The notes beneath the pieces were generated by a model, which was given only the letters and a program-made list of their open reading frames with translations, ran no database searches and was not told where the DNA came from. DNA of 64,000 nucleotides, taken from the NCBI GenBank assembly GCA_002269645.1, contig NIVC01000561.1, forward strand, positions 124,001 to 188,000, in the 5' to 3' direction. This DNA is from Macrostomum lignano. Its lineage: Eukaryota. The stretch's first letter is position 1. The number at the start of each line of letters is the position of its first letter. Both the position numbers and the translations under genes were made by a program. Positions 10,417 through 52,610 of the stretch are shown here, piece by piece.

Positions 10417-13400
10417 ATGACGGACCCACCTGAGCCGCAGAAGTTCGAGTCAGTGCTCGAGTCGGTGCTCGAGTTGCGAGACTGCGGCCTCCTCACTGAG
10501 TGGCTCATCCATGGCGGCAGTCCTGACGAGCAGGACTCTGACGGCAGGTCCTTCCTGCACGTCGCCAGCTTTCTAGGAAATGCAGAGGCCGCGCGGCTGC
10601 TCGTGGAGGCCTCAGCGAACGTCGATCTGGCCGCAGCTGACGGCTCTACGCCGCTGCACGAGGCTGTCCTCGGTGGCAGCGAGCAACTGACGCGGCTTCT
10701 GCTACGAGCCGGAGCGAGTCCAGCCGCCCGGACGGTGGGCGGCGCCCTGCCGATGCACCTGGCCGCGACCATTGAGTCCGGCGACGACATCGCGCGGCTG
10801 CTGGCCGGACCGACCTGCGCCGCCACCGACAGCCGTCAGGAGCCGCCACCGGTCTCGGGAGCTTCCGGCCCGCTGCCGACTCCGCTGTTTCTGTGCGTCA
10901 TGGTCGGCCGGGCTGGCGCTGTGGACGCCCTGACTGCCGCCGGGGCAGACCCGAACTGCTGCCCCTCGGAGCTCGAGCTGGAGGCCCTTCAGCAGCTGCT
11001 GTGGGCTCTGATAAAGGCTTCGCCTAGTCGGATTTCATTTCTGAAGATATTACAACTCGTATTCGTTTATGAAAATTTTTTTGTGCCCTAAACGGGACGG
11101 CGATGAAGGTCGCAGCAATACTGGGCAATGCCGAGATCGTTCGAATATTGCTGAGTGCCGCTGCAGATCCCGACAGGCGGAACCCGAGCAGCTCTCTTGG
11201 TTTAACTCCACTTCATGAGGCTGTACTATTTGGGCACATTGATGTGATGAGCCGGCTACTTAACGCAGGTGTGAATGTCGATATTACGGATGAAGAAGGC
11301 TTCACTTCTGTTCACCATGCCCTGCCAAGTGACTGTGGGCCTGAAGCACTCGCAGTTCTCCTCAGAGCCGGAGCCAATGTTGATTCATCATCAGATACTG
11401 GTGCAACGCCTCTTCATTTAGCAGTCTTGTATGGTTTTCAGGAGGTCGCGAAGCTGCTGATCAGTGCCAGGGCGAATGTCGACGCTCGAAACTCCAATGG
11501 CGACACGCCGCTGCACCATGCAATTTATAAAAGTAGAGCAGAGCTGGTTGCCATGCTGCTCAGAGCTGGAGCCAGGGTCGACCTGCTGAACAACCGAGGT
11601 CAAACTCCCCTGGCCCTGGCTGTTGATAAAACATCCCCGGAGATCGTCAGCGAGCTGATTAGAGCTGGAGCTTCAGCCGATATGAGCAGCAATAACAACA
11701 AGGATTTGGTCAAGGAGGCCCTCGAGTGTCGGCAGCTGTCCATGGCTCGCATGCTGATTGACGCCTCTGCCAAAATAGATGAAAAAAAGAGCTCAGAGTG
11801 GTTTATGCTTGCCTTAATGGCTGGTTTCACAGAGGCGTTGCAGCTTCTGATCGATGCTGGTGTCAGGCTGGATCAGACAGAGCCGATGGGCCTCATGCTG
11901 TCCTTCTTTACTTCTTTTCAAGAAAATGCCTCAGTCAGAAAGTTGCTGCTTGCTGCCGGAGCGGACATCCCAGCAGATTTGACCAGCTTCTTTTTCGCAA
12001 TCTCAGCCCCCGATCCGTCCAGCCCAGCCGCAGCGCCGACCGTCCGGTCAGCGGAGGAGCAGCGCCAGTTCAGCTCGCGGCTGTCCGAAGCCATGCGAGC
12101 CGCCGGGTTCAAGCAGGCCAACGCGGCAGTTCAGAGCGGCGCTGCGGCCGCGCTGCAGGACATCCTGAGAGACCTGATGGACGACAAGGACATCTTCGTG
12201 TTCGGCAGCTTCGCAGACGGATGGGGCAGCAGCCTGGAGATTCTGAACGGGGAGATCAGCTGGGACTCCGACATTGACGTCACCTTCATGGAGTCCGGTA
12301 GACTTCTGTGCCTGGACTGCGGCTCTGCCGGCTGGACCGGCTGCAGTGGCTGCGGCAGAGATGCGATCCGAGTGCAGTGTGAGAACGGACACGCCTACTA
12401 TGAGCATGGCTGTGAGTAGCTCAATGCCTCTTGAGCATGTAATCATATAAACCAGTAGCTTTCTAAGTGAATGGACCCTCTGGCTTAGCAGATAGTTGCT
12501 GAGAGCTCTGGCTTGGTTCGTGCACTTCGACCCGGCTCTACGGGTCGAGAATTGAAACAGGCAGTGGAGCCTACAGGAGGGAGTTCGACTCAGGTGATGC
12601 AGCAGTGTAACACGGGCCCCACATTGGCAGGATTGTCTGCGTGAAGTCTGGGATTTCTCACAGACTGCTGTCGCTAGGCTGGGTGCCTGGGGGCAAACAC
12701 TTCCCAAACACTTCACAAATGTGTGCGGATTAGTTAAGTTTGCCTTTCCCTGCTTTCTGCTTTCCAGCTGGACTAAGGAGCTATTATCCCGGAATCTAAT
12801 GTGTGTGGATAGAAACAGATAGAAATTGGAGGAAAATTTGGTGGCGCGGCGCCCTACCAAGTCCTGATGCAGCAGGAAAATTTTTGCTGGAATCAAAATA
12901 AACTTAAGTTCGAAAAATCATTTAGTCAGCATTTTTGTCGACACATCCATCTACACATTTACAGCCACGGGACCAAACATGGCAAGGAATCAACCATTTG
13001 AGTTCACAACGATTTTTTCTGGTACCCACGTGAATATCGATTTAATATCTGCCGTGACCTGCTGCCGCTACCCCCGCATCGAGCTGCTGCAGCCCGACTA
13101 CTCAAACCGCAGAGGCCAGCCGTCCCAGATGCCTCAGCGCATCCTGAACCAGCTCAACCAGGAGGCTCTCGGCGACTCTCCAAAGTGCCACGCGGTCGCT
13201 GCGTCGCCTCCTCACAAACGGCCTGGCAGCTGCATGCGGGTGAGCACAACCCTGCTGGAGAGAGCCGTCATGCACAGCCTCACCACCGTGCAGGGCCAGT
13301 TCTTCATCCTCGTCAAGTTCCTCATCAAGAAGGTGATCAGCATCGAGATGAAGGTGAGCGGTCTGAAGACGTACATGGCCAAGAACCTGCTGTTCTACAT

Positions 13401-15013
13401 GCTCGACGAGACGCCGGAAGAAGAATGGAAGCCAGAAAACTTGCTGCAACTCGTGCGGCAGTCGCTGCAGCTGCTGGTCGAGATGATGGAGAGCTCAGAC
13501 TCCGATACAGTGTGCATGAAGCACTTCTTCCTACGAGATGCAGATGTATACTTCAAAAAGAGTCAACCGCCGAAGAAGGACATTGTGGATGCGGTCAATG
13601 GGGTGATTGACGAGCTTCCTCGTTGGCTACATCAATTCCAAGGCCAGCTGAGAAAAAATGCGAGCAACTCTGTGCGGTTCGAGCCTTTCAGGCTGTTGCA
13701 GGCCTTCCGTATCTCAAGTGACGTGCAGCGGTACTCGGGCTACAGCTCAATCTGGGGCTTGGTGAGTCATTGCCTGCTTAAACTCGGCTCGGACCGGCGG
13801 GGTCAGTCGGAGTCCGAGCACCTGTCGGAGCTGCTGCAGCTGATCGATGAGCTGCCAGACTGCGCCAGATCAGCCAGAGAGAGCCTCAGGCTGATGGCGC
13901 ATCTCAAAGTCGGAGCACCGCTGGATGCGGCCGGTGCTGCAGCGGGACTGACGGGTCAGGAGAGCAGCGGCATCGAGTGTCCGGAGAGTCCTGGCGGAGG
14001 CAACGAGCTGCTGTCGGTGGGCGAGGCGAAGGAGCTCGTGTGGCGGCACCTGGAGGAGACTGCAGACTCCGCCACGGTTTTTTTTTTAGTTTTTGAAGAG
14101 GAACTGGATTTTGGATTTCTGCCATCTCGCGGCAATTTATCACTGATCAAGTCTGCAGGAAACAGATTAGAGCTGGAATTTTGTGAAACAAATATTCCGA
14201 ACATTGATTTTAGAAAACTTCTGGCGAGTCTGGCTGCTCAGGATGAGGCAGCTTCAACTGAGTCGCAGAATGTTGAGCCCAACCTACAAATGGTTTCAGC
14301 TGTGTCCAGCAAATTCTTAGTTTTAGCTTCTGAATTTGATGAAGAGAATCTTGCTTCCCTTTTCAACAGGCTGAGTGAAATGATTCAGCAGGTTCCGCAA
14401 CTTTTCGATTTTGCTTTATTAATGGTAAGATTGCGTCACAATAATCAGCCTAGAGTTTCTCCCCTGACTTTCGTGACCATTCTGAATTTTCAGGTTGAAA
14501 ATTTTCCTGAGTTTTGGAGCTTTATCGTAAACTCTTTGGCGGGTGTGCTGCATTGCATCCTGCATGATGAGACACCAGAAGACCTCCGCAACTTCAGAGC
14601 CGCAGCCGCGGATCCGCAGGCCCTGCAGCAGCTCCTGCAGTCAGAAATCGATGCCGTACCGAGCGACCCTGACTTGCCGTCTTCTCTACAGCCTTTTCTC
14701 GAGCGAATCCATGACTTCGTACGTCTGAATTAAATTTAAACAATTTTTTATCCAATTTCAATTTAGGTAGCCATGTAAAGTTGCAGCAATTGTAAATCCT
14801 AGAAACAGCAGATGGTGATTGAACTGTCAGTAAAGTTTTTGTGAATTCTATGTTCTGCCTTTGCCACCATTCCAGCTTCAGGATGAAAGAATTTTAAGCC
14901 TACTCACGGTGCTGCTGCCCATGGCGCTGGATGCAGCTGAGAGGCTGAGATCTGAGGATGAAGCTGGCGAGATGCGGCAGCTGCCCGGACCGCAAGAGGA
15001 TGCTGAGGGCTGA
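10417..15013 (+). CDS. Gene A: ankyrin-repeat / Mab-21 (cGAS-like, cGLR) nucleotidyltransferase fusion; exons 10417-12411, 12965-14718, 14876-15013; ~1295 aa after adding one T at 11076-11082
   Basis: About 12 ankyrin repeats (TPLH motifs), then FVFGSFADGW-x-DSDIDV (NTase GS and DxD). The phase-1 intron (gtgagt...tttacag) joins in frame to HVNIDLI (third acidic residue). Mab-21 C-lobe motifs follow: MRVSTTLLERAVM, LKTYMAKNLLFY, EEEWKPENLL, MKHFFLRDADVY. A phase-0 intron (gtacgt...ttccag) opens a 45-aa acidic terminal exon. Confidence 0.85.
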
Positions 15014-15470: not shown

Positions 15471-16154
15471 ACAGATTTTCTGCATAACTATCAATAATCT
15501 CAAGATTCGAGATGTTTTCATAACCATGCGTGTAAAACTTGACTATCCAACATTTGTTTTCTTGGACAGTAGAGATCTTGGATTTTATCTTAGTTTTCTG
15601 CTATTTAAACAAATTTATCTTTACCAGCGTTAATTCTGCTTCAAAGATTTTATCAGTTTACCAATATCAATTACTAATTATTTAACTACTGAAACCAAAA
15701 ATATATTTTAATCGAGTCATTTATAGAATTCGACTCAGCCAAGCAGAATCCTCGATGCCAGTTTTTTGTCAAACAATTTTTAAAAATAATTTTCCGGATT
15801 ATTGAATGATCTGTTTCTGTCAGCTAAGCTTTCAAACTGAGTAATATAATCACACTAAAGGGCTCACCAGAGTTCTAGATTCGGGGACAGTGGATGCTCA
15901 CATCACTTGCACGAAACAAGAAACCATTACGTCAGAAGTCTGGGACACTGGGAGTTGCACTGATGCAGCTGCAGCATCATCTTAACTGCAGTCTTTTGAC
16001 ATAAGCCTGCATTTTAGTTAGGGTCTGAGAGGCACCAGTCTTGGTATTGACCTTGAATTTGCTTTCAAAAGAAGTTTTAGAAGCAGGAGGCTGTGTGCAC
16101 CCTATGGCGCACTTTAAGCGACATTGTCGCACAACCGGCGAGAGGCATTACTGC

Positions 16155-16404
16155 CCATTCTGCCGACTCCCCTGAGCAGGCACACAAGCGCGCGGATACG
16201 TACGCAGTCATACGCACAGGCACACACTCACACAGGAGTGCACAGCGGCCCCAACTTATATTTATCGTTAGGCATGTACACTTCACTGCGCCTTGGGGGT
16301 TGGGCCTAAATTGAACGATCAGAGATTGATGTGACTGCATTTAGAATCGAGCCTGGGCCGCTGGCCCATCAGAGCACCGCAATGGACCACTGGGCTACGG
16401 CTGC
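16155..16404 (-). mobile_element. tRNA-derived SINE copy 1
   Basis: The minus strand begins with Pol III A-box (TAGCCCAGTGG) and B-box-like (GGCTCGATTC) motifs. The body matches 35738-36025. Confidence 0.7.
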
Positions 16405-16927
16405 GGCCCTCCTAAGCGTCTAACATCCTCTTCTTTGAGTGTCTGCTTGGCTGTTCGACAATTGTGACTTTCGCTCAGGTGCCGAGTCTCTGACTTTCGA
16501 TCGTATTTAAGCAATTTTGCATTAAAGCTACTGGCAGTAGTCAGACTGAGTTCTGATCTGGACTCGACCTGCGTATGCATGTACCAGCCCAAGGGCTCTA
16601 ATTCAAGTAGCCTGGAAACCTACACGGATTTTCTGTCTTGGGGAAACATTGAAGCAATCATTCATTCAATTCATGACGGTAGAAGGCATCGGGGTCACCA
16701 GCAATCTGTTTTTACATAATTTTCCAGTATTCGGGACCAAGACCTGGTTCCAGATTCTTTCATTACTTTTATTGGGTTTAGAAATTTCTAAATAAGGAAT
16801 TTATGACTCTTTCACCGACTGCAGCAGTACGAATGCTGTATAATTCACATCTCTTTTTCGAATTCTCTTCTCCTGCACTTTTCTGTTACCGAATTTTCAG
16901 CCCGATGAAACAGCAACTTTGGGCTGT

Positions 16928-17568
16928 GTCAACCACCTGTGTGTTAGACAGCAGTGTCACCTGTGTGTTGAACAGCAGTATCACCTGTGTGTTGAACAGC
17001 AGTGTCACCTGTGTGTTAGACAGGAGTGTCACCTGTCAGTTAGGTGACAGGAGTGTCACCTGTGTGTTAGACAGCAGTGTCACCTGTGTGTTAGACAGCA
17101 GTGTCACCTGTGTGTTAGACAGCAGTGTCACCTGTGTGTTAGACAGCAGTGTCACCTGTGTGTTAGACAGCAGTGTCACCTGTGTGTTGAACAGCAGTGT
17201 CACCTGTGTGTTAGACAGGAGTGTCACCTGTCAGTTAGGTGACAGGAGTGTCACCTGTGTGTTAGACAGCAGTGTCATCTGTGTGTTAGACAGCAGTGTC
17301 ACCTGTGTGTTAGACAGCAGTGTCACCTGTGTGTTAGACAGCAGTGTCACCTGTGTGTTAGACAGCAGTGTCACCTGTGTGTTAGACAGCAGTGTCACCT
17401 GTGTGTTGAACAGCAGTGTCACCTGTGTGTTAGACAGGAGTGTCACCTGTCAGTTAGGTGACAGGAGTGTCACCTGTGTGTTAGACAGCAGTGTCATCTG
17501 TGTGTTAGACAGCAGTGTCACCTGTGTGTTAGACAGCAGTGTCACCTGTGTGTTAGACAGGAGTGTCA
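16928..17568. repeat. 24-bp satellite (GTCACCTGTGTGTTAGACAGCAGT), array 1, with ~195-bp higher-order period
   Basis: Tandem units. The variant gtcacctgtcagttaggtgacagg recurs at about 17030, 17225 and 17445. Confidence 0.95.
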
Positions 17569-17682
17569 TCTTGATGATATGAAATCATACAGAACAGTTG
17601 AAATCCACAGGGCAGGATTTCGCTCCTTATTAAAACAAAGACTAGCTACCACAACAGCATTGTCCCCAAAAGGACCGATACG

Positions 17683-19783
17683 GGTTGTAAGGAGATCGCA
17701 AAGCTGCTGATCGGTGCCAGGGCGAATGTCGACGCTCCAGACTCCGATGGCAACACGCCGTTGCACCACGCAGTTCGTAAAAGAAGAGCAGAGCTGGTTG
17801 CCATGCTGCTCAGAGCTGTAGCCAGGGTCGAACTGCTGAACAACTGGCGTGAAACTCCCCTGACAATGGCTGTTGTTTATATGAGAACCCCGGACATCGT
17901 CAGCGAGCTGATTCGAGCTGAAGCTTCTGCCGATATGAGCAGCAACAACAATGAGGATTTGGTCAGCCATGCCATCAAGTGTCGGCAGCCGACCGTGGCT
18001 CGGATGCTGATTGACGCTTCTGCCGACAACATGTTAGAGTGGTTTGTACTTGCTATAGGGACCGGTTTCACAGAAGTGGTGCCAGTTCTTATCGATGCAG
18101 GGGTCAGGTTTAATCAAACAAGGCTGATGATTCCAAGCAATGACTCAGTCAGACAGTTGCTGGTTGCCGCTGGAGCAGAAATCGCACCAGAAGCGTTGAC
18201 CAGCTTCTTTTCTGCAATCTCAGCCCCCGATCCGTCCAGCCCAGCCGCAGCGCCGACCGTCCGGTCAGCGGAGGAGCAGCGCCAGTTCAGCTCGCGGCTG
18301 TCCGAAGCCATGCGAGCCGCCGGGTTCAAGCAGGCCAACGCGGCAGTTCAGAGCGGCGCTGCGGCCGCGCTGCAGGACATCCTGAGAGACCTGATGGACG
18401 ACAAGGACACCTTCGTGTTCGGCAGCTTCGCAGACGGGTGGGGCAGCAGCCTGGAGACTCTGAACGGGGAGATCAGTCCGGACTCCGACATTGACGTCAC
18501 CTTGATGGAGTCCGATAGACTTCTGTGCCTGGACTGCGGCTCTGCCGGCTGGACCACCTGCAGTGGCTGCGGCAGAGATGCGATCCGAGTGCAGTGCGAG
18601 AACGGACACGCCTACTATGAGCATGGCTGTGATTGTCGGATATGCCTGTCGGAACATGCCTGTCGGAGCTGCTGCAGCTGATCGGTGAGCTGCCAGACTG
18701 CGCCAGATCAGCCAGAGAGAGCCTCAGGTTGATGGCGCATCTCAAAGTCGGAGCACCGCTGGATGCGGCCGGTGCTGCAGCAGAACTGACGGGCCAGGAG
18801 AGCAGCGGCATCGAGTGTCCGGAGAGTCCTGGCGGAGGCAGCGAGCTGCTGTCGGTGGGCGAGGCGAAGGAGCTCGTGTGGCGGCACCTGGAGGAGACCG
18901 ACACTGCCGCAGTGCTTCAGTTTCGGTTCAAAAAGGAATTGGATTTTGGATTTCTGCCATCTCGCGTCAAGAAATTATTTATCGTTTTTTTCAGGCGTCA
19001 GATGGAAGCCGGAATTCTTCTGGTCGAAAATTCCTCCAATAGATTTTCGAAAACTTCTTGCGAGTCTGGCTGCTCAGGATGAGGCAGCTTCAACTGAGAC
19101 GCAGAATGTTAAGCCCAATCTGCAAATGATTCAAGCTGGGTCCAGCAATTTTTTGGATGAAGAGAATTTACCTCCCGATGTAGACTGGCTGCTTATATGG
19201 AGTGAGCAGGCTCCGCAAATTTTCGATTTTGTTTTTTCTATGGTAAGATTGCGCCGTAATGCTGGGTATTCTGCTGAGAGTTTCTACCATGACTTTTGTG
19301 ACCACTCTGAATTTTCAGGCCGAAAAGTTTCCTGAGGTTTGGAGTTACTTTTTTAACGGCTTAGCAAGTGCATCGTATTGCCTGCTCCAGGATGAGGTAG
19401 CAGCTGTAGACGAAGCTCAAGAAGTACTCCGCAAGCTCAGAGCCGCAGCCGCGGATCCGCAAACCCTGCAGCAGTTCCTGCAGTCTTTAGTGGATGACGA
19501 ACTATTGTATGATGATGAAGAACTGAGGGAATTCGTACGTATTTCGTACGTATTAAATTCGTACGTAATTTAAACAGCAGGTGGTGATTGAATTGTCAGT
19601 AAAGTTATAGTGAATTCCACTGTTGTGTCTTTCCGACCATTCCAGCTTCAGGATGAAAGAAAGTTAAACATAATCACGACGGTGCTGCCCATGGCGCTGG
19701 ATGCAGCTAAGAGGCAGTTGTCCGAGGATGAAGCTGGCGAGATGCGGCAGCTGCCGGGGTCACAAGAGGATGCTGAGGACTGA
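17683..19783 (+). pseudogene. Gene B: 5'-truncated, internally deleted ANK-cGLR pseudogene
   Basis: Starts mid-ankyrin (homologous to gene A ~11440) and keeps GSFADGW/DSDID. At 18632-18659 it jumps to the equivalent of A 13821, losing intron 1, the third Asp and most of the Mab-21 lobe, with at least two further frameshifts (~18990, ~19270). It retains exon 3 (19646-19783). Confidence 0.85.
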
Positions 19784-21475: not shown

Positions 21476-21479
21476 GCTC

Positions 21480-21595: not shown

Positions 21596-21734
21596 CCCCC
21601 CCTAAGAGTCTACCAACCTACTTGGAGTGTCTGCTTGCTGCTCGATAAATGTGACTTTCTCTCATTTGCTGAGTTTGACAGTTGATCATATAGCTATTTG
21701 AGTAACTTTGCATTGAAGCTACTGGCAGTAGTCA

Positions 21735-23110
21735 GCAGGGTCACCTGTGCGTTAGACAGCAGTGTCACCTGTGTGTTAGACAGCAGTGTCACCTGTGTGT
21801 TAGACAGCAGTGTCACCTGTGTGTTAGACAGCTGTGTCACCTGTGTGTTAGACAGCTGTGTCACCTGTGTGTTAGACAGCAGTGTCACCTGTGTGTTAGA
21901 CAGCAGTGTCACCTGTGTGTTAGACAGCAGTGTCACCTGTGTGTTAGACAGCAGTGTCACCTGTGTGTTAGACAGCAGTGTCACCTGTGTGTTAGACAGC
22001 TGTGTCACCTGTGTGTTAGACAGCAGTGTCACCTGTGTGTTAGACAGCAGTGTCACCTGTGTGTTAGACAGCAGTGTCACCTGTGTGTTAGACAGCAGTG
22101 TCACCTGTGTGTTAGATAGCAGTGTCAAGGTGTTAGACAGCAGTGTCACCTGTGTGTTAGACAGGAGTGTCACCTGTAGGTTAGATAGCAGTGTCACCTG
22201 TGTGTTAGACAGCTGTGTCACCTGTGTGTTAGACAGCTGTGTCACCTGTGTGTTAGACAGCAGTGTCACCTGTGTGTTAGACAGGTGTGTCACCTGTGTG
22301 TTAGACAGCAGTGTCACCTGTGTGTTAGACAGCAGTGTCACTTGTGTGTTAGACAGCAGTGTCACCTGTGTGTTAGACAGCAGTGTCACTTGTGTGTTAG
22401 ACAGGAGTGTCACCTGTGTGTTAGACAGCAGTGTCACCTGTTTGTTAGACAGCAGTGTCGCCTTTGTGTTAGACAGCAGTGTCATCTGAGTGTTAGACAG
22501 GTGTGTCACCTGTGTGTTAGACAGCAGTGTCACCTGTGTGTTAGACAGCAGTGTCGCCTTTGTGTTAGACAGCAGTGTCACCTGTGTGTTAGACAGGTGT
22601 GTCACCTGTGTGTTAGACAGCAGTGTCACCTGTGTGTTAGACAGCAGTGTCACTTGTGTGTTAGACAGCAGTGTCACCTGTGTGTTAGACAGCAGTGTCG
22701 CCTTTGTGTTAGACAGCAGTGTCATCTGAGTGTTAGACAGGTGTGTCACCTGTGTGTTAGACAGCAGTGTCACCTGTGTGTTAGACAGCAGTGTCACCTG
22801 TGTGTTAGACAGCAGTGTCACCTGTGTGTTAGACAGCAGTGTCACCTGTGTGTTAGACAGCAGTGTCACTTGTGTGTTAGACAGGAGTGTCACCTGTGTG
22901 TTAGACAGGAGTGTCACCTGTTTGTTAGACAGCAGTGTCGCCTTTGTGTTAGACAGCAGTGTCACCTGTGTGTTAGACAGCAGTGTCACCTGTGTGTTAG
23001 ACAGGAGTGTCACCTGTGTGTTAGACAGCAGTGTCACCTGTTTGTTAGACAGCAGTGTCGCCTTTGTGTTAGACAGCAGTGTCACCTGTGTGTTAGACAG
23101 CAGTGTCACC
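21735..23110. repeat. 24-bp satellite (GTCACCTGTGTGTTAGACAGCAGT), array 2
   Basis: Same unit as 16928-17568, in the corresponding part of the duplicated unit. It explains the NTQVTLLS/DSSVTCVL ORFs. Confidence 0.96.
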
Positions 23111-23829
23111 TTACAGATATGAAATTATTCGAGCAGCTTTAACCCACATGGCAGGATTCCGCACCTCAATAAAACAAAGACTACCAAAACAACTTTTGGG
23201 GCGCTAAAAAGGCCGTTTTACATAAACAATGGCCGAAAAAGACAGAAAATATTCTGCCAATTATTTTTGATAGAACTGTCAGTTTAAGAAGAGCTGAGTT
23301 TCCAAGAAATCAACACGAGCACGAGTTTATTTCTTTAATTTGTTAAAATCAGCACTGAGAACGGACTCGTTTGCACATCCAATTGAAACAAAATGCCTGA
23401 AAACGTAAACGATAATAATTATATTTACCTGTATGTCGAATCTGCATGTTGAACGTTGAGTTCATAATTCAAGATCTTACAGTTTAATTTGTCAGAGTAA
23501 AATCCCAAGCTTCAAAAACTTATTGAATACATACAGTCTTTATAATCATTTATGTCTGCGACTTCTTTGTTTGGGACAGTGTAATTAATGTAATATTATG
23601 ATTATGTGTGCAAAAGTAGTTTCTTCAGTGGCAGGCTAAAAAATCTTCCTGTTCATCCTCTGGGCAGGTTACATTTTCACCTGTGAGTCGTGTATTTGTC
23701 AACTAGGAAGCGGCTCCATTATTTTTAACAGCTTATCCCTGCTGTTATTATTCAAATGAATTAAAAAAACCTTCAGCTTGATGTGCTTTAGGCAGCGTAA
23801 ACTGTTGTTGCATATCATCAATAGCGCTA

Positions 23830-24600
23830 AGTTAATATAAGGTTGTAAAAATGGAATTTTCATCCTCATCCCATTATTAAAAATCCTTATCATGCAATGT
23901 CATGATGGCTTTGACAATTTCAGACTCGCTCACAGAACCATCACAGCTTTCTCGGCCATCCCAACGTGTCGAATCCTCTTCTGCTTTTACTTTGATCTCT
24001 GTCTCTTGAATTTTTTTCCATGTCTGATTGGTGAGCTCCATTGCCACAGGCTTCCCCTCCAGCTACACAGCCTGCGGCTCCCAGAGCACCTGCAACGATT
24101 GGGATAAGAGCCGCCAGAGGTAGGATTCCACCAGAATTTTCATCTGTGAAGCTGTGCGCTTGCTCATTACACTGAAATATCTGCTGTGTGGAATCGATTT
24201 TGACTTTGACCTTGGGTAATTACCCTGATTTGATGATTTGATTGATTTTGTGTTTAATATTATAATTACTTCTGTGTCAGCTGGTATGACGAATAGTTCA
24301 GCTTTTCTGAATGTTCCGTGCGGGTAATTTAAGGGTAATTTAGTGGATAAAAGTAATAATCTCCGGGGTCTAAGGTAGTATTCCTGTCTGTTTTATGCGG
24401 ATCAGGGCTAAAATACGGAGTACATATTTCTATGCGTGTTTAAATAGCTACAAGTAGGGTGGCGGTCTGTCTACCCATTTTGTAGAGTATTGTCCTGCAT
24501 TAATGTTTAGCTCTTCAGCTGTCTGCTTGGTGTCTGCATCTATAGACTACAGCGTGACACGTTTTTTGCTAATTAATTGATGAAGCCAGCTGATTCTACC
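23830..24600 (-). mobile_element. Degraded Polinton/Maverick (adintovirus-like) fragment encoding an adenovirus pX/mu-like core protein
   Basis: With stops and frameshifts, the minus strand reads EYYLRPRRLLLLSTKLPLNYPHGTF... (~24390-24240) and GGILPLAALIPIVAGALGAAGCVAGG (24132-24055). The latter is the GG-hydrophobic motif I recall from adenovirus pX and Polinton homologues. Assignment is from motif recall, not a search. Confidence 0.5.
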
Positions 24601-24679
24601 GGTAGTTTATTCCATGCAACTAAGAAAAGTTAACAATAAAAATAAGTCAACCCAAATTAAAGGTTCGAAACAAGGTCGT

Positions 24680-25072
24680 CAAGACTGAACTTCGGTCTCT
24701 CGAAGGGTCGAACAGCAAGGAGAGCAGAAGCATAAGCAGACTGTACACAAGAATAAGAACACTTTTCCGATTCATCTCTCTCCTAGTGACTCACGTGACC
24801 ACTCTGAGGGCTCTTATTGTCTGGATGGCATAAACAAGTCTGGAGTGCAAAATAATTATCCAAGTGCACGGACAAACCTTGCTCGCTCGCTTTTTAATTT
24901 GCTTCCACTTACAGAGACGAATCACTGTCTGGATAAGCAAAAAACCAGAAAAATACAATATACGTAAGTACTAAAATACTTCTTTTAAGCACAGGAGCTA
25001 GAGCTCCTTTCAAAAAAACTGGCAATAAACTTTTGTGGCACCAAAAATCAATAAAAAACAGAACAGAAAGTC
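24680..25072 (+). promoter_or_regulatory. Conserved upstream block of ANK-cGLR gene C
   Basis: Paralogous to 10085-10416. Contains tgactcacgtgac (overlapping AP-1-like and E-box motifs). Confidence 0.5.
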
Positions 25073-28000
25073 ATGCCGGACTCACCTGAGCCGCCGCAGT
25101 TCGAGTCGGTGCTCGAGTCGCTCGAGTCGGGAGACTGCGGCCTCCTCACTGAGTGGCTCATCCATGGCGGCAGTCCTGACGAGCAGGAATCTAACGGCAG
25201 GTCCTTCCTGCACGTCGCCAGCTTTCTCGGAAACGCAGAGGCCGCGCGGCTGCTCGTGGAAGCCTTGGCGAATGTCGACCTGGTCGCAGCTGACGGCTGC
25301 ACGCCGCTGCACACAGCAGTTCATAAAAGAAGAGCAGAGCTGGTTGGCATGCTGCTCAGAGCTGGAGCCAGGGTCGACCTCCTGAACAGCAATGGCCTGA
25401 CTCCCCTAGCCCTGGCCGTTAATAAAGAAAACCCGGAGATCGTCAGCGAGCTGATTCGAGCTGGAGCTTCAGCCGATATGAGCAGCAATAACAACAGGGA
25501 TTTGGTCAGGCAGGCCATCATGTGTCGGCAGCTGTCCATGGCTCGGATGCTGATTGACGCCTCTGCCGAAATAGATAAAAAAAGAGCTTAGAGTGGTTTA
25601 AGCTTGCCTTGTTGACTAGTTTCACAGAGGCGGTGCAACTTCTGATCGATGCTGGTGTCAGGCTGGATCAGACAGGGCCGATGGGCCTCATGCTGTCGTT
25701 TTTTACCATGCTTCCAGGCAATGCCTCTGTCAGAAAGTTGCTGCTTGCTTCTGGAGCAGAAATGGCACCAGAAGAGGTAATGAGTTTCATTTCCGCATTC
25801 TGCTCAGCCCCAAGGCCACCCCGCCAAGCCGCAGCGCCGACCGTCCGGTCAGCGGAGGAGCAGCGCCAGTTCAGCTCGCGGCTGTCCGAAGCCATGCGAG
25901 CCGCCGGGTTCAAGCAGGCCAACGCGGCAGTTCAGAGCGGAGCTGCGGCCGCGCTGCAGGACATCCTGAGAGACCTGATGGACTGCAAGGACATTTTTGT
26001 GTTCGGAAGCTTCGCAGACGGATGGGGCAGCAGCCTGGAGACTCTGAACGGGGAGATCAGCTGGGACTCCGACATTGACGTCACCTGGATGGAGTCCGAT
26101 AGACTGCTGTGCCTGGACTGCGGCTCTGCCGGCTGGACCGCCTGCAGTGGCTGCGGCAGAGATGCGATCCGAGTGCAATGCGAGAACGGACACGCCTACT
26201 ATGAGCATGGCTGTGAGTAGCTCAGTGCTTCCTGAGCATGTGATCATTATAAACTAGTGACTTTTTAGTGTCCTGGGCCCTCTGGTTTAGCAGGTAGTTG
26301 CAATGAGCTCTGGCTTTTTTGTGCGCTTCGACCCATATTGAAGCGGGCAGTGGAGCCTACAGGAGGGAGTTCATGTCAGATGATGCGGCAGTGCAAAACT
26401 GGCAGGATTATCTGCGTCAACTCTGGGCAATCTCACAGACTGCTGTATTCAAGGTGGGTGGTCTGTAGGCAGACACGTTCCGCCTTGCTTGTTGCCTTTC
26501 CCTGCTCTCTGCTCTCCAGCTGCACTCGACGAAAGTAAAGAGCAATTTAAAAGGCATTTCTTGTATGTGGATTGCTAAAGTAACCAGAGAAATAAAAGAT
26601 GAGAATGAATGCTTGCTGGCGGGGCTGTGTGCAAAGCATTGAGTGCTTGCTGGAATCAAGATAAATTAAAGTTGGTAAATATTGCAGTCATCGTAGTTGT
26701 ATTAGTTCTTATGCAGCGTTTAGGAGGCTAAGCACTCGATTTTTCACATTCACAGCCACGGGACCTAACATGGCAACAATGCGTTCATCAGAGCCTTTTA
26801 ATCATCGTTTGCATGTCAATATCGATCGAATACTTGCCGTGCCCTGCTGCCGCTACCCCCGCATCGAGCTGCTGCAGCTCGGCTACTCAAACCGCAGAGG
26901 CCAGCCGTCCCAGATGCCTCAGCGCATTCTGAACCAGCTCGAACAGGAGGCTCTCAGCCACTCTCCAAAGTGTCACGCGGTCGCTGCGTCGCCTCCACAC
27001 AAACCGCCTGGCAGCTGCATGCGGGTGAGCACAACCCTGCTGGAGAGAGCCGTCATGCACAGCCTCACCACCGTGCAGGGCCAGTTCTTCATCCTCGTCA
27101 AGTTCCTCATCAAGAAGGTGATCAGCATCGAGATGAAGGTGAGCGGTCTGAAGACGTACATGGCCAAGAACCTGCTGTTCTACATGCTCGACGAGACGCC
27201 GGAAGAAGAATGGAAGCCAGACAACTTGCTGCAACTCGTGCGGCAGTCGCTGCAGCTGCTGGTTGAGACGATGGAGAGCTCAGACTCCGATACAGTGTGC
27301 ATGAAGCACTTCTTCCTACGAGATGCCGACGTGTACTTTGAGAGGGATCAACTCCCGAAGAAGGACATTGTGGATGCGGTCAATGGGGTGATTGACGAGC
27401 TTCCTCGCTGGCTGCATCAATTCCAAGGCCAGCTGAGAGAAAATGCGAGCAACTCTGTGCGGTTCGAGCCTTTCCGGCTTTTGTGGGACTTTCATTTTTC
27501 ACGTGACGTGCAGCGGTACTCAGGCTACAGCTCAATCTACGGCTTGGTGAGTCATTGCCTGCTTAAACTCGGCTCGGACCGGCGGGGTCAGTCGGAGTCC
27601 GAGCACCTGTCGGAGCTGCTGCAGCTGATCGGTGAGCTGCCAGACTGCGCCAGATCAGCCAGAGAGAGCCTCAGGTTGATGGCGCATCTCAAATTTCACG
27701 CACCGCTGGATGCGGCCGGTGCTGCAGCAGAACTGACGGGCCAGGAGAGCAGCGGCATCGAGTGTCCGGAGAGTGCTGGCGGAGGCAGCGAGCTGCTGTC
27801 GGTGGGCGAGGCGAAGGAGCTCGTGTGGCGGCACCTGGAGGAGACCGACTCCGCCACAATTTTAAATTTTTTGTTTGAAGAGGAACTGGATTTTGGATTC
27901 CTGCCAGCTGCTGCAAAGCAACATTTTATTATCAGGTTCAATTTGAACAATCAGACATTTCCGCTGCCAGTAGACTTTGTCCAGTTGCATAAGTCCCTGG

Positions 28001-29136
28001 CAGGTCGGGAATCAGCTCCATTTGAGACGCAATTTGGTCAGGAAATCGTTGCTGGACTCTCCCAGAGATGTGACGTGAAAGCTCTTCATGAGGCTTTTGA
28101 TGTGGCTGAAACAATCGAAAGCGGGACTCGGCGCTTTCTATGCGGAAGGATGGGTCAGATTTTACAGGCATATCCTGAGTACAGTAATTATGTCATATCA
28201 TTAGTAAGATTTTATTCAATTTTTTACTTTGACTGTCGCACTCCACATTCATTGACTTCACCTGCAAATGCTTCTCGAATCAACATTTTTCAGATGATTG
28301 CAAGCCCACAATTTCGAGGCCGACTGATAGAGTTCGGTTCTGAAATTTTTTGCCATTTGTTTCAAGAGTTACGTCTTGAAGACATCCGCAACTTTCGTGC
28401 CGAAGCTGCGTCTCCTGAGTGGCTGCAGGAAATCCAGCAGAAATTTCTGCAGTGGTTTTTGGACAGCGCAGAAAGCCAACCGCCTCTACAGCTCTTTCAG
28501 TCAGATGAAGCTTTGAGATCGTCCATTTCTGAAGTCATCAAATCGGTAGTTTAAAAAATAGCAAAAATTAAAACATTAGAAAGCAAAATAATTTAAATAC
28601 TTTGGGAGTTTCAATCAAATAAAAATGTTAGCCACAAATTTTAGTCCAGCACTTTCAAGGCAAAGATTTCAGCTTTGGAAACCCATCTGTTTCAGATGTC
28701 GGCTGAACCATGCATCTTTCAAGACGCGCTACTCTTGGCCCTAGATAAAGCTGAGAGTCTGCAATCCGAGGCTGAGCCTGGCGAGATGCAGCAGCTCCCT
28801 GGGCTGCAGGAGGAGCCGCTGGATGGAGCCGAGAGTCTGCAAGCCGAGGCTGAGCCTGGCGAGATGCAGCAGCTCCCTGGGCTGCAGGAGGAGCCGCTGG
28901 ATGGAGCCGAGAGTTTGCAATCCGAGGCTGAGACTGGCGAGATGCAGCAGCTCCTTGGACTGCAGGAGGAGCCGCTGGATGAAGCTGAGAGTCTGCAATC
29001 CGAGGCTGAGCCTGGCGAGATGCAGCAGCTCCCTGGGCTGCAGGAGAAGCCGCTGGATGAAGCCGAGAGTCTGCAAGCCGAGGCTGAGCCTGGCGAGATG
29101 CAGCAGCTCCCTGGGCTGAAGGAGACTCCGGATTGA
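25073..29136 (+). CDS. Gene C: ankyrin-repeat / Mab-21 (cGLR) nucleotidyltransferase fusion; exons 25073-26212, 26756-28545, 28696-29136; ~1123 aa after adding one base at 25577-25583
   Basis: Same exon phases as gene A (gtgagt...ttcacag; gtagtt...tttcag). About 5 ankyrin repeats, intact GS/DSDID/VNID, near-identical Mab-21 core, divergent C-terminal region and an expanded acidic exon 3. Confidence 0.85.
28750..29133 (+). repeat. Coding 78-bp (26-aa) tandem repeat x5 in gene C exon 3
   Basis: AESLQ(S/A)EAEPGEMQQLPGLQEEPLD(G/E) four times plus a partial fifth copy. Confidence 0.9.
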
Positions 29137-30683
29137 GTTTTATTTGTCTCCTCAGCCTGCCAGCTCGCAGCGGCAAGATGGAGCAGCGGTGCTGAGGTAC
29201 TTTTGAAGCTGACGTGCCTGACTGATTGCCGTGTGAGGCATCACCTTGCTCTACTCTCATGCCTGCATCTCACCCTACGTCTCACTGAAATTTTACTGAT
29301 TCTCATAGAGACTTTACTGTAAGTCTTCTCAATGCACTGTTGCGAAATCCCAGTCTACTGTTGTAATGCACTTTCTGCACTCTCTCCCTACACGATGTGG
29401 CGGGAGGTTATACACGTAAGTATGTTCATATGGCTGTATCAGTTCGCCGTGAGTTTATTAATACCAATATTTTCTTGCATAGTTTTTCAATAATTTTTCT
29501 CGCATAGCTAAATCTAAAGAGGCTGGACCCGTGCCCCTTGCAGATCCATAAACTCTTTTTTAATCAAATTTTGCCGTGTGAAACTCTGGTTTGAAAACTG
29601 CACAATGCCCCTGAATAATGAGCAGCTTGAGCATTTTGATTTTGAGCCGTTTAGCGGCGTCTCACAAAGTTTGAAGACCAGAGTTGATTGTTTCTCTTTT
29701 GCTTCTGCACACCAGAAATTGTTCAAAGTGATTGTCTTCTATTTTTCATATTTTATTTTATTCATATTTTAATTTTAATAATTTTAAAAAGAATGTTCTC
29801 TTCTTGCAGACGAGTTAAGTAATAATTAGCAGCTTAATAAATCATAATTCTGTTTTATTAATTAGGCTTAATAAGTTCGTGAATCATCCAACATTTGCTT
29901 TTTTGCAGTAGAGATCTCGGATCTGATCTCAATTTTCTGTTATTTAAACAAATTTCTCTTTGCCACTGCTGATCCTTTTACAAAGATTTCTTTAGTTTAC
30001 CAATATGAATTGCTTTTTATTTAACTATTTAATAATAAAATGAATCTCAATCGACTCCTTACCGATTTCGGCTCAGCCTCGCAGAATCTTCAAAGCCAGT
30101 TTTTATATTTTCGTCAGACAAATAAATTTAATTAATAACTCTCTTGATTATGGGATGATCTGTTTCTGTCAACTAAGCTCGAAAACTGAATAATATAATC
30201 ACACTAATCAGCTCATCATCAGAATTCTAGATTTGAGATCAAGGACACTGGGTGCTCACATCACCTGCACAAAACAAGAATCCGTTGAGTAAGAAGCCTG
30301 AGACACTGGGAGTTGCAGTGATGCAGCTGCAGCATCATCTTAACTGCAGTCTTCTGGCAAAAGCCTGCATTTTTGTTAGGGTTCGAGAGAGCCTCCGGAC
30401 TCATATTGTCTTTGAGTCTGTTTTAAAGCCTTTTTGAAGCTCTAGGCGTCTCAACATATGTTTTAGTTAGAGGCAGGGGGCTGGGTGCACCCTGGCGCAC
30501 TTTAAGCGACATTGTCACACAACCGGCGAGAGGCAATCCTGCTCCAATTACTTCAGAATTCAAAAAGTTCAACAACTTTAAGAAGTTTAAACCAACAGGG
30601 CAGGATTTCACTCCTCAGTAAAACAAAGACTACCAGAACAGCGTGGCCCCAAAAGGGCCGTTTTATATATACATCGCAAAAAT

Positions 30684-30910
30684 TCTGCAAGCTGAGGATG
30701 AAGCTGAGAGTCTGTAAGCGTAGGATGAAGCTAATGAGAGTCTGCAATCTGAGGATGAAACTGAGAGTTCGTAAGCTGAGGATGAAGCTGAGAGTCTGCA
30801 AGCTGAGGATGAAGCTGAGAGTTTCAGAAGAGAGAAGCTGGGAGCTCCCTCGGCTGCAGAAGAGCCTATAGATTGGCCTCTCACACTACGTGTCATTAAC
30901 TTTTACTCAT
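30684..30910 (+). pseudogene. Remnant D: degenerate exon-3/3'UTR fragment of a fourth ANK-cGLR copy
   Basis: 27-bp units (gagagtctgcaagctgaggatgaagct = ESLQAEDEA) with stops, followed by sequence matching gene C 3' flank (~29270). It is flanked by ~40-bp direct repeats (30647-30685, 30935-30973). Confidence 0.6.
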
Positions 30911-39150: not shown

Positions 39151-45864
<6,714 letters not shown>

Positions 45865-52453: not shown

Positions 52454-52486
<33 letters not shown>

Positions 52487-52487
52487 C

Positions 52488-52546
<59 letters not shown>

Positions 52547-52571
52547 CACAGACAGACACACAGACAGACAC

Positions 52572-52610
<39 letters not shown>

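What the first reader, a model, noticed from the sequence alone, without database searches (positions are those of the whole stretch)
10417..30910. Tandem array of ankyrin-repeat / cGAS-like (Mab-21, cGLR) receptor genes hidden by introns and single-base frameshifts
Seen: the ORF track shows only fragments, but phase-matched splicing joins them into one architecture, ANK repeats - GS..DSDID | VNID nucleotidyltransferase - Mab-21 C-lobe - variable helical region - acidic tail. It is present as two near-complete genes (A, C), one pseudogene (B) and one remnant (D) within 20 kb. All three NTase acidic residues are intact in A and C, and the vertebrate cGAS zinc thumb is absent. Known: cGLRs are nucleic-acid or other pattern sensors that make cyclic dinucleotides for STING-type receptors, and ANK- or TPR-fused Mab-21 proteins occur in some invertebrates. 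Inference: this is a birth-and-death innate-immune receptor locus whose sensing specificity may lie in the ANK and C-terminal modules. This five-part architecture may be undescribed in this lineage.
Basis: partly seen in the sequence, partly recalled or inferred. Interest (0 to 1): 0.9.

Follow-up and report, generated by a model that had tools for sequence, protein, structure and literature searches.

The report
Flatworm ankyrin–cGAS-like receptor gene array
This stretch of the flatworm Macrostomum lignano genome really does hold a tandem cluster of ankyrin-repeat/cGAS-like enzyme genes in different states of decay, but the gene family is already in public databases and in the 2023 census of animal cGAS-like receptors, so it is a sound but largely known finding.

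Summary
The window is Macrostomum lignano DNA.

- **Copies.** Positions 10417-30910 hold four related copies. A and C are near-complete genes of three coding exons (1295 and 1123 aa), each broken by one single-base frameshift at a homopolymer run. B is 5'-truncated, has a 1.4-kb internal deletion and is frameshifted. D is only a remnant of the acidic tail exon.
- **Correction.** The A "intron 1" is a frameshift in coding sequence, not an intron.
- **Family.** Membership of the Mab-21/cGLR superfamily rests on a profile comparison (99.8 %, active-site motifs aligned) and a fold search (cGAS, MB21D2, Sp-cGLR1, MAB21L1 on top).
- **Turnover.** Birth-and-death is supported by comparison with a second assembly, which shows a retained deletion segment, an extra mosaic copy and an intact C counterpart.
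- **Novelty is low.** Copy C is already a UniProt entry. About 90 clusters of this family exist in M. lignano. Li et al. 2023 list M. lignano ANK-cGLRs and cloned five relatives, none among their 15 active enzymes.
- **Open.** Immune function, product, ligand and receptor are all inferred. The acidic pI argues against direct nucleic-acid sensing.

The parts
10417..12411 (+). Copy A, coding exon 1: about 14 ANK repeats, a linker and the NTase N-lobe (GS597...DSDID, then a CLDC-x7-CSGC insert). It carries one 1-nt frameshift.
   Evidence: ORFs; Pfam ANK; donor GGCT|GTGAGT; repaired translation of 1295 aa.
11076..11082 (+). T7 homopolymer run in copy A where one base is missing relative to the reading frame. 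It is a frameshift, not an intron.
   Evidence: P0002 and P0175 read through the homologous stretch. Adding one T gives a continuous ORF.
12412..12964 (+). Copy A intron 1 (GT-AG, phase 1). It splits the NTase between the DxD motif and the third catalytic Asp.
   Evidence: The junction ...YYEHG-S-TGPNMA is matched by P0001 and P0175.
12965..14718 (+). Copy A exon 2: third Asp (VNID), Mab-21 C-lobe, conserved helical extension (SELLQLI..PDCA..FGFLP) and the hypervariable C-terminal module.
   Evidence: Pfam PF20266 at 27.4 bits; alignment; hhalign; segment analysis.
14876..15013 (+). Copy A exon 3: a single-unit acidic tail (…ALDAAERLRSEDEAGEMRQLPGPQEDAEG*), reached through the intron 14719-14875 (GTACGT...CAG, phase 0).
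   Evidence: The splice is inferred from the sites, the phase and homology to the tails of P0018 and P0175.
17683..18627 (+). Copy B, 5'-truncated remnant of exon 1 (the last ANK repeats plus the NTase N-lobe with GS...DSDID).
   Evidence: tblastn; frames. It starts directly after the minisatellite 16934-17568.
18628..18659 (+). Copy B deletion junction. The intron, the third Asp and the Mab-21 C-lobe (about 1.4 kb in A) are missing. A short filler of repeated CTGTCGGA sits at the junction.
   Evidence: The homologous copy in the other assembly keeps this segment (L001 2339-3711).
18660..19783 (+). Copy B remnants of the exon-2 3' half (at least two frameshifts) and of the tail exon (19646-19783).
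25073..26212 (+). Copy C exon 1: about 6 ANK repeats plus the NTase N-lobe, with a 1-nt loss at 25576/25577 next to an A7 run.
   Evidence: It is 98-99 % identical to P0001, which is intact at this site.
26756..28545 (+). Copy C exon 2 (after the phase-1 intron 26213-26755): VNID, Mab-21 C-lobe, helical extension, and a variable module only 31 % identical to that of A.
28696..29136 (+). Copy C exon 3: acidic tail made of 4.9 copies of a 78-nt (26-aa) repeat, AESLQSEAEPGEMQQLPGLQEEPLD.
   Evidence: It is a 100 % match to the end of UniProt model P0003.
30684..30850 (+). Copy D: an orphan, stop-ridden remnant of an acidic tail exon (AEDEAESLQ...AESFRREKL), of the P0175 tail type.
   Evidence: No other part of the gene is found downstream of C.
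15567..16084 (+). Conserved 3' flank of the duplication unit. It also occurs at 20369-20636 (after B) and 29906-30514 (after C).
   Evidence: Repeat families D9, D13 and D15.
21729..23111 (.). 24-nt minisatellite between B and C, with the same unit as 16934-17568 before B. It produces long spurious ORFs on both strands.

Best explanation
Window 10417-30910 is a tandem array of lineage-specific ankyrin-repeat/cGAS-like-receptor (Mab-21 family nucleotidyltransferase) genes of the flatworm Macrostomum lignano. The array evolves by duplication, unequal exchange or gene conversion, and decay.

Each functional unit encodes a large acidic protein with these parts, in order:
- an N-terminal ANK array of variable length;
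- a cGAS-fold NTase with a complete GS / DxD / D active site;
- a family-specific helical extension;
- a swappable hypervariable C-terminal module;
- an acidic repeat tail.

The most likely mechanism is inferred, not shown. The protein would be held inactive until the ANK and/or C-terminal modules engage a ligand, more likely a protein or another non-nucleic-acid cue than dsDNA or dsRNA. The NTase would then make a nucleotide second messenger for a still unidentified receptor.

Shown here: the anatomy, the homology, the fold, conservation of the active site, purifying selection on the core, mosaicism of the C-terminal module, and structural differences between assemblies.

Inferred: catalysis, the product, the ligand class, the immune role and the downstream receptor.
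For: - Species and identity: all close hits are M. lignano. P0003 (UniProt A0A1I8I3M4) is 98.5-100 % identical to its four matching pieces of copy C.
- Homology: a family profile against a profile of PF03281+PF20266 proteins from bivalves gives hhalign probability 99.8 %, E 2.6e-28 over 305 columns. GS, SDxD and the third Asp fall in the same columns.
- Fold: an AF2 model of the paralogue P0005 (pTM 0.73) hits only the cGAS/Mab-21 clade in its top 20 matches. These are cGAS 4k97 (E 1.7e-4), MB21D2 7lt1, Sp-cGLR1 8gjy, MAB21L1 5eom, bacterial CD-NTases and MiD49/51. After them the E-value jumps above 2.
- Active site: S, D and D are invariant and the third D is at least 90 % conserved in the family alignments. 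The motif is present in A and C.
- Selection: between A and C the core has dN/dS 0.36-0.66 at dS of about 0.1. The C-terminal ~200 aa are only 31 % identical, with dS 1.76.
- Turnover: in the Mlig_3_7 contig NIVC01000561.1 the B counterpart keeps the 1.4 kb that is deleted here. The C counterpart (P0001) is intact. A further mosaic copy (A-like ANK plus C-like 3' half) lies downstream of it, where the window keeps only remnant D; the exact position was not aligned.
- Expression of close relatives: BOX15_Mlig models come from a genome-guided RNA-seq transcriptome (PMC5730564). P0001 and P0175 join the ANK and NTase exons.
- Expansion: 95 clusters at 50 % identity score E<1e-10, and every sampled hit down to E 6e-15 is M. 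lignano. Most of those examined carry ANK arrays.
- Ligand class: pI is 4.7-4.8 for the whole protein and 6.0-6.4 for the core. Li et al. report that nucleic-acid-sensing cGLRs are basic.
Against: - No enzymatic, expression or infection data exist for these copies.
- A and C each carry a frameshift as assembled, so strictly no copy in the window is intact.
- Pfam's NTase-domain model PF03281 does not hit even the spliced protein. A family profile finds no solved structure by sequence. The assignment therefore rests on profile-profile and fold evidence.
- The structure was modelled on paralogues (47-51 % identity for P0005; P0001 for full length) with only moderate confidence (pLDDT 67-69).
- Five M. 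lignano relatives were cloned by Li et al. and carry no 'active' label in their Table S3.
- cGAS and STING are reported lost in Schistosoma and Schmidtea. Whether M. lignano has a STING was not determined.
Confidence: 0.6

Rival explanations
1. Decaying array: all four copies in this window are pseudogenes. A and C were recently inactivated by frameshifts, and the function is carried by intact paralogues elsewhere in the polyploid genome.
For: A and C each have a 1-nt frameshift as assembled. B and D are clearly dead. The genome has extensive duplicated blocks (PMC5730564), so redundancy is high.
Against: - Both lesions sit at homopolymer runs (T7 and A7).
- The 98.5-100 % match to ML2-derived UniProt models suggests the window comes from the PacBio ML2 assembly. 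Fewer mapped transcripts have intact ORFs on that assembly than on Mlig_3_7.
- The counterpart of C in Mlig_3_7 is intact at the same site.
- dN/dS between A and C is below 1 in every segment, and neither copy has any other stop.
Confidence: 0.25
2. A catalytically active NTase with different chemistry: not a cyclic-dinucleotide synthase. It could make a linear 2'-5' or 3'-5' oligonucleotide (OAS-like), act as a terminal RNA nucleotidyltransferase, or nucleotidylate proteins, with the ANK array recruiting the substrate.
For: - The N-lobe motif FGSFADGWG...SDIDV resembles the FGS..G.G..SD.D motif of non-canonical poly(A)/U polymerases (my own knowledge).
- There is a weak Pfam hit to MTPAP-like_central (E 0.025-0.17).
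- The GS-to-DxD spacing is about 8 residues longer than in the bivalve cGLR-like profile.
- The screened relatives gave no labelled active product.
Against: - The PAP/TUTase hit is below threshold.
- The fold search ranks cGAS, MB21D2, cGLR and CD-NTases on top, with no PAP, TUTase or OAS in the top 20.
- The C-lobe is Mab-21_C.
Confidence: 0.12
3. Non-enzymatic Mab-21-like scaffold or adaptor, like MAB21L1 or MiD49/51. The ANK and C-terminal modules would mediate protein-protein interactions and the NTase fold would only bind a nucleotide.
For: MAB21L1 and MiD49/51 are among the fold matches. The proteins have large protein-interaction modules and are acidic.
Against: The full GS / DxD / D set is invariant or nearly so across a family that is otherwise only 35-50 % identical. 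That conservation is hard to explain without catalysis. Li et al. separate Mab21L1/2/3 from cGLRs by exactly this criterion.
Confidence: 0.08

Closest known systems
Predicted M. lignano cGLRs in Li et al. 2023 (Table S3 rows 89-93, e.g. PAA57558.1 = P0004; Table S2 ANK-bearing PAA67649.1 and PAA58690.1)
   Same: Same species and same family. P0004 is 46-48 % identical to copy A (E 1.6e-119). They share the GSF.DGWG...SD.D signature, the CC.YP and CHAV motifs and the PDCA helical extension. ANK fusions are already listed there.
   Different: A and C belong to a subfamily with a CxxC-x7-CxxC insert, a hypervariable C-terminal module and an acidic repeat tail. The accessions of their nearest intact relatives (PAA80900.1, PAA90451.1) were not found in the held parts of the supplement. 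The tandem-array organisation is not described there.
ANK-fused cGLRs of the coral Stylophora pistillata, and the solved Sp-cGLR1 (PDB 8gjy)
   Same: The architecture is a cGLR NTase core fused to ankyrin repeats. Sp-cGLR1 is a fold match at E 1.3e-3 with 20 % identity over 216 columns.
   Different: It is from a different phylum. Sp-cGLR1 itself has no ANK, senses dsRNA and makes 3'3'-cUA. Corals have several STINGs. No activity is known for the flatworm proteins.
Bivalve and annelid Mab-21/cGLR-like proteins, some with C-terminal TPR (e.g. Sinanodonta woodiana KAL3855470.1, Ruditapes philippinarum XP_060600956.1, Lamellibrachia satsuma KAI0227343.1)
   Same: These are the nearest relatives outside Macrostomum. 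HMM E-values are 1e-9 to 1e-14, and hhalign gives 99.8 % with the active-site columns aligned.
   Different: They hit Pfam PF03281. Their repeats are C-terminal TPR rather than N-terminal ANK. They lack the 8-residue insertion between GS and DxD and the PDCA extension.
Human MB21D2 (orphan cGLR, PDB 7lt1)
   Same: It is among the top fold matches (E 3e-4) and is also an orphan with an unknown ligand.
   Different: It is a single-domain protein with 11-12 % identity.
Vertebrate cGAS
   Same: It is the best fold match (4k97_A, E 1.7e-4) and has the same catalytic triad logic.
   Different: The flatworm proteins have no H(X5)CC(X6)C zinc thumb and no basic N-terminus, and they are acidic rather than basic. 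Sequence identity is about 13 %.

Membership tests
cGAS-like receptor (cGLR) / Mab-21 nucleotidyltransferase superfamily | Bilobed cGAS/Mab-21 fold (Pol-beta-like NTase core plus a helical C-lobe). | tested here: met
   An AF2 model of the paralogue P0005 (47-51 % identity to A) was searched with Foldseek against the PDB. The top 20 matches are all cGAS, MB21D2, cGLR, MAB21L1, CD-NTases or MiD, with E down to 1.7e-4. The test used a paralogue, not the window protein itself.
cGAS-like receptor (cGLR) / Mab-21 nucleotidyltransferase superfamily | Complete active site: G[S/G] motif, [D/E]h[D/E] and a third acidic residue. | tested here: met
   A has GS597-598 and DSDID then VNID. C has GS312-313 and DSDID then VNID. 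These columns align with GS / SDxD / D of PF03281-positive proteins and are invariant or at least 90 % conserved in the family. B lacks the third Asp.
cGAS-like receptor (cGLR) / Mab-21 nucleotidyltransferase superfamily | Significant sequence-model match to the Mab-21 domains (Pfam PF03281 for the NTase, PF20266 for the C-lobe). | tested here: inconclusive
   PF20266 is above its cut-off in A (27.4 bits) and C (26.0 bits) against 24.1. PF03281 is not detected even on the spliced protein. The link to PF03281 proteins is only transitive or profile-profile.
cGAS-like receptor (cGLR) / Mab-21 nucleotidyltransferase superfamily | Ligand-dependent synthesis of a cyclic nucleotide second messenger. 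| not testable with these tools
   Five M. lignano relatives were cloned by Li et al. 2023. They carry no active-enzyme label in Table S3, and flatworms are absent from the list of actives.
Nucleic-acid-sensing cGLRs (cGAS, Dm-cGLR1, Sp-cGLR1 type) | Positively charged ligand-binding surface, seen as a high predicted pI. | tested here: not met
   The pI of the NTase/Mab-21 core is 6.4 in A and 6.0 in C. The whole proteins are at 4.8 and 4.7. The criterion is from Li et al.. pI is only a crude proxy for the surface.
Vertebrate cGAS | Zinc thumb H(X5)CC(X6)C. | tested here: not met
   A regex finds no such motif in A, C, P0001, P0175, P0004 or P0005. A different CxxC-x7-CxxC insert lies between the DxD and the third Asp in the A/C subfamily.
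cGLR-STING pathway | A cognate STING (or other cyclic-dinucleotide receptor) in the same genome. | not tested
   M. lignano is not in the held part of Li et al. Table S5. The literature reports STING lost in Schistosoma and Schmidtea. No paper found here addresses Macrostomum.
MAB21L1/2/3 developmental proteins | Mab-21 fold without a predicted functional active site. | tested here: not met
   A and C have the complete triad, so they are not of this type.
Non-canonical poly(A)/U polymerases (MTPAP/TUTase) | Significant match to PAP/TUTase palm and PAP-associated domains. | tested here: not met
   The only hit is PF22600 at E 0.025-0.17, 12-15 bits against a cut-off of 27. None appears in the top fold matches.

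The most novel reading that the evidence does not exclude
Macrostomum, an early-branching flatworm in a phylum otherwise described as having lost cGAS-STING, has built a repertoire of about 90 clusters of acidic ANK-cGLR proteins. In this reading their specificity is set by swappable ANK and C-terminal modules. They would sense non-nucleic-acid cues, for example pathogen or self proteins, and signal through a receptor other than canonical STING. That would be an independently evolved, modular cGLR-based recognition system, and this array would be a snapshot of how it diversifies.
Probability: 0.2. Interest if true: 0.7.

Novelty: new member of a known kind. Interest (0 to 1): 0.35.

Why it matters
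The locus is a clean, small example of how an invertebrate receptor family diversifies. The catalytic core is kept at 88-93 % identity between copies, with dN/dS below 1. Meanwhile the number of ANK repeats, a ~200-aa C-terminal module and the length of the acidic tail are exchanged or replaced, and copies are truncated, deleted or lost between haplotypes or homeologues.

It also flags M. lignano as the flatworm in which cGLR biology could be studied, because the species is transgenic- and RNAi-tractable. Parasitic flatworms and planarians are reported to lack the pathway.

It does not change current understanding. The family and the ANK fusion are already catalogued, and the function is still unknown.

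Tried and rejected
- **Pfam on the spliced NTase-Mab-21 protein:** only PF20266 hit, not PF03281.
- **Structure prediction of my spliced copy-A protein:** I modelled the paralogue P0005 and the full-length relative P0001 instead.
- **PDB sequence search with a profile that included ANK rows:** swamped by ankyrin proteins and useless. Repeating it with ANK-free paralogues gave no hit to cGAS, OAS or MAB21L1 at E<=10.
- **NCBIfam:** only generic ANK matches.
- **The reading of 11056-11102 in A as an intron:** rejected. There is no AG acceptor in the required interval, and the paralogues translate straight through.
- **A gene prediction that splices 28207-28695 out of C (UniProt P0003):** judged a work-around for the assembly. 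The ORF continues to 28545, and the transcript-derived P0001 reads the equivalent region.
- **Literature searches for Macrostomum with cGAS, STING, cGLR or innate immunity:** nothing specific beyond the supplement of Li et al..
- **STING in M. lignano:** not searched. The protein search tool lists only the best hits of a query, and no reliable lophotrochozoan STING query was at hand.

Full report
**1. What the sequence is**

The window is eukaryotic and very rich in minisatellites. I spliced the NTase-Mab-21 part of copy A and searched it against the large protein collection. It returned 18 hits, and every one that carries an organism name is from the free-living flatworm Macrostomum lignano, with E-values from 1e-66 to 1e-295.

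One hit, P0003 (UniProt A0A1I8I3M4, "ANK_REP_REGION domain-containing protein"), is 98.5-100 % identical to its four matching pieces of copy C (accession). So the window is M. lignano DNA, and copy C already has a public gene model, although a mis-spliced one.

**2. Checking the observation**

- Pfam finds ANK repeats in the 5' fragments of A, B and C.
- Pfam finds the Mab-21 C-terminal domain (PF20266) above its curated cut-off in the long 3' ORFs of A (27.4 bits) and C (26.0 bits), against a cut-off of 24.1.

The intron inside the NTase is real.
- In A the exon ends at 12411 (GGCT|GTGAGT) and resumes at 12965 after ...tttacag.
- In C the coordinates are 26212 and 26756.
- The phase is 1, and T + CC gives Ser.
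- Two M. lignano proteins read exactly ...YYEHG-S-TGPNMA... across this junction: P0001 (PAA80900.1) and P0175 (PAA90451.1). Both come from the Mlig_3_7 annotation, which was built from a genome-guided RNA-seq transcriptome (PMC5730564).

A second short intron joins the acidic tail exon.
- In A it runs 14719-14875, and in C 28546-28695. Both are GT...AG and phase 0.
- This splice is inferred from the sites, the phase and homology. Its acceptor in C is the one used in P0003.

One point needs correction. The break in A between 10417-11091 and 11103-12419 is not an intron.
- The interval has no AG acceptor.
- The paralogues P0002 and P0175 translate the homologous stretch.
- One extra T in the T7 run at 11076-11082 restores a single ORF.

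The break in C is the loss of a G next to an A7 run. C reads GATAAAAAAAGAGC, while copy A and the second assembly read GATGAAAAAAAGAGC. With these two single-base repairs, A encodes 1295 aa and C encodes 1123 aa, with no other stop.

Copy B is dead.
- It begins abruptly at 17683, directly after a 24-nt minisatellite.
- It runs through the NTase N-lobe, then jumps from the exon-1 donor to mid exon 2 (18627 to 18660). The junction holds a small filler of repeated CTGTCGGA.
- This deletion removes the intron, the third Asp and the Mab-21 C-lobe.
- Further frameshifts follow.

Copy D (30684-30850) is only a stop-ridden acidic-tail repeat. Its sequence, AEDEAESLQ...AESFRREKL, matches the tail type of P0175.

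About 0.3-0.6 kb of 3' flank is also repeated after A, B and C. The count of two near-complete genes, one pseudogene and one remnant is therefore correct.

**3. What the proteins are**

By plain sequence models the family is very divergent.
- PF03281, the Mab-21 NTase domain, is not detected.
- A profile of ANK-free paralogues finds no solved structure at E<=10.

Three other lines of evidence establish the relationship.

(i) An HMM of the family was searched against 1.84 billion representative proteins.
- It finds 343 hits, of which 95 score below 1e-10.
- Sampled hits from E 1e-190 down to 6e-15 are all M. lignano.
- The next hits (E from 1e-14 to 1e-9) come from an annelid and from bivalves, and eight of ten examined carry PF03281 plus PF20266, some with C-terminal TPR.

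(ii) A profile-profile comparison of the flatworm family with those PF03281-positive proteins gives probability 99.8 % and E 2.6e-28 over 305 columns. The GS motif, the SDxD and the third Asp (…D.I.A..CC.YP against …D.V.A.rC..WP) fall in the same columns.

(iii) An AlphaFold2 model of the paralogue P0005 (pLDDT 67, pTM 0.73) was searched against the PDB.
- The matches are mouse and human cGAS, human MB21D2, coral Sp-cGLR1, MAB21L1, bacterial CD-NTases and MiD49/51.
- These fill the top 20 places, with E down to 1.7e-4.
- After them the E-value jumps above 2.

The Ser of GS and the two Asp of DxD are invariant, and the third Asp is at least 90 % conserved, across family members that share only 35-50 % identity. 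Both A and C have the full set.

The cGAS-type zinc thumb motif H(X5)CC(X6)C is absent. However, the A/C subfamily has its own CLDC-x7-CSGC insert between the DxD and the third Asp. In the full-length model this insert lies between two short strands joined by a low-confidence loop. A zinc knuckle there is a guess.

The full-length model of P0001 gives:
- a confident ANK solenoid (pLDDT 84-95);
- a reasonably confident NTase/Mab-21 core;
- low-confidence helices for the variable C-terminal region.

**4. How the locus evolves**

A and C differ in a mosaic way.

| Segment (A against C) | aa identity | dS | dN/dS |
|---|---|---|---|
| Shared ANK repeats | 78-86 % | 0.15-0.19 | 0.43-0.66 |
| NTase, Mab-21 C-lobe, conserved extension | 88-93 % | about 0.1 | 0.36-0.63 |
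| C-terminal ~200 aa after FGFLP | 31 % | 1.76 | 0.42 |

- In the C-terminal segment synonymous sites are near saturation, so that module has a different history from the rest of the gene.
- A has about 287 extra residues of ANK repeats.
- C has 4.9 copies of the 26-aa acidic repeat, while A has one.

A second assembly adds to this picture. It is Mlig_3_7 contig NIVC01000561.1, fetched as L001, and it is 92-98 % identical to window 15897-29494. It differs structurally in three ways.
- The B counterpart still has the 1.4 kb that is deleted here.
- The C counterpart is the intact gene for P0001.
- A further copy lies downstream of it, where the window keeps only remnant D. It has an A-like long ANK array and a C-like 3' half.

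Whether L001 is an allele or a homeologue cannot be decided. The DV1 line carries large duplicated blocks. Either way, this is direct evidence for birth-and-death with exchange between copies.

**5. Are A and C alive?**

As assembled, neither is intact. Several points suggest the frameshifts are recent or are assembly artefacts.
- Each copy has a single 1-nt lesion at a homopolymer and no other stop.
- dN/dS is below 1 in every segment.
- The counterpart of C is intact.
- The 98.5-100 % identity to ML2-derived UniProt models suggests the window comes from the PacBio ML2 assembly. Fewer mapped transcripts have intact ORFs on that assembly than on Mlig_3_7.

I put the chance that both are truly pseudogenes at about 25 %.

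**6. Likely function**

The complete and strongly conserved active site argues for catalysis, and against a MAB21L1- or MiD-like scaffold role.

By analogy with characterised cGLRs (established knowledge; Li et al. 2023, PMC9980059), the likely mechanism is ligand-triggered synthesis of a nucleotide second messenger.

Two observations argue against direct sensing of dsDNA or dsRNA.
- The proteins are acidic: pI 4.7-4.8 overall and 6.0-6.4 for the core. Li et al. find that nucleic-acid-sensing cGLRs are basic.
- Five M. lignano relatives were cloned for their screen with poly I:C and ISD45 (Table S3 rows 89-93; row 91 is my P0004). None carries an active-enzyme label, and flatworms are not among the actives.

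The variable ANK array, the swappable C-terminal module and the acidic tail are therefore the plausible sites of ligand or partner recognition, or of autoinhibition. This is inference.

The downstream receptor is unknown. cGAS and STING are reported lost in Schistosoma and Schmidtea (PMC4117786; PMC13563047). I could not determine whether M. lignano has STING.

A different NTase chemistry remains possible. The FGS..G.G...SD.D motif and a sub-threshold MTPAP-like hit point that way. The fold ranking does not favour it.

**7. Comparison with what is known, and novelty**

[quoted passage not shown] They also state that some cGLRs are fused to ANK or TPR repeats.
- Their domain table lists M. lignano accessions with Ank_2 domains (PAA67649.1, PAA58690.1).
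- Their screen table lists five M. lignano proteins.

So the family, its presence in this flatworm and the ANK fusion are already catalogued.

What is not described in any paper I found:
- the locus organisation;
- the mosaic C-terminal module;
- the acidic repeat tail;
- the Cys-rich insert.

I rate this as a new member of a known kind.

**8. Surroundings**

- Upstream of A lies a Ty3/gypsy-type retrotransposon pol (6111-9676; protease, RT, RNase H and integrase).
- Downstream on the minus strand are EF-hand ORFs (31605-32348 and 33888-34394) and a calpain fragment (51860-53077).
- The long ORFs at 16803-17582 and 21694-23142 are translations of a 24-nt minisatellite, not genes.

Noticed in passing
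window 6111-9676 (+): Two adjoining ORFs encode a Ty3/gypsy-type LTR-retrotransposon pol (aspartyl protease, RT, RNase H, integrase zinc-binding and core domains), immediately upstream of copy A. I did not look for LTRs or assess whether it is intact.
   Followed up: partly
window 16934-17568 and 21729-23111: The same 24-nt minisatellite (TAGACAGCAGTGTCACCTGTGTGT) flanks copy B on both sides. It generates ORFs of up to 471 aa on both strands that are not genes. The 5' truncation of B abuts the first array.
   Followed up: partly
copy A aa 632-646 (window ~12310-12354); copy C aa 347-361 (~26111-26155): A CLDC-x7-CSGC insert lies between the DxD and the third catalytic Asp. It is specific to the A/C/P0001/P0175 subfamily. 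Other family members have H...C...C...DGH at this place. It could be a zinc knuckle at a different position from the cGAS zinc thumb.
   Followed up: partly
window ~17560-17680 and ~30520-30640: A short shared element (translating as ...KSTGQDFAPY*NKD... and ...KPTGQDFTPQ*NKD...) sits just upstream of the truncated start of B and just upstream of remnant D. It may be a repeat involved in the truncations.
   Followed up: no
window 31605-32348 (-) and 33888-34394 (-): ORFs on the minus strand with EF-hand domains. The first also translates a 24-nt minisatellite (32174-32729) into IEYLSRV repeats and contains a poly-Q run. They may be exons of one calcium-binding gene.
   Followed up: partly
window 51860-53077 (-): An ORF with the C-terminal part of a calpain (Peptidase_C2) catalytic domain, interrupted by or adjacent to an (AGAC)n microsatellite at 52454-52938.
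   Followed up: no
whole window: There is an unusual density of 20-26-nt minisatellites and (AGAC)n/(CAGA)n microsatellites, in 37 TRF rows with score >=200. They cause strong local GC/AT skews (for example 40001-42000, 46001-48000 and 60001-62000) and many spurious long ORFs.
   Followed up: partly
L001 18493-23265 (Mlig_3_7 contig NIVC01000561.1): A further full-length copy lies downstream of the C counterpart in the other assembly, where the window keeps only remnant D. Its ANK region is A-like (73 % identity over 720 aa in one frame) and its 3' half is C-like (90 %). This indicates recombination or gene conversion between array members.
   Followed up: partly
P0018 (MetaClust UPI0007A1DC3B, 981 aa): A predicted M. 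lignano protein fuses C2H2 zinc fingers to a B-like derivative: the ANK and NTase N-lobe join directly to ...LSELLQLIGELPDC..., skipping the Mab-21 C-lobe. It is either a chimeric gene model or a second deletion derivative elsewhere in the genome.
   Followed up: no
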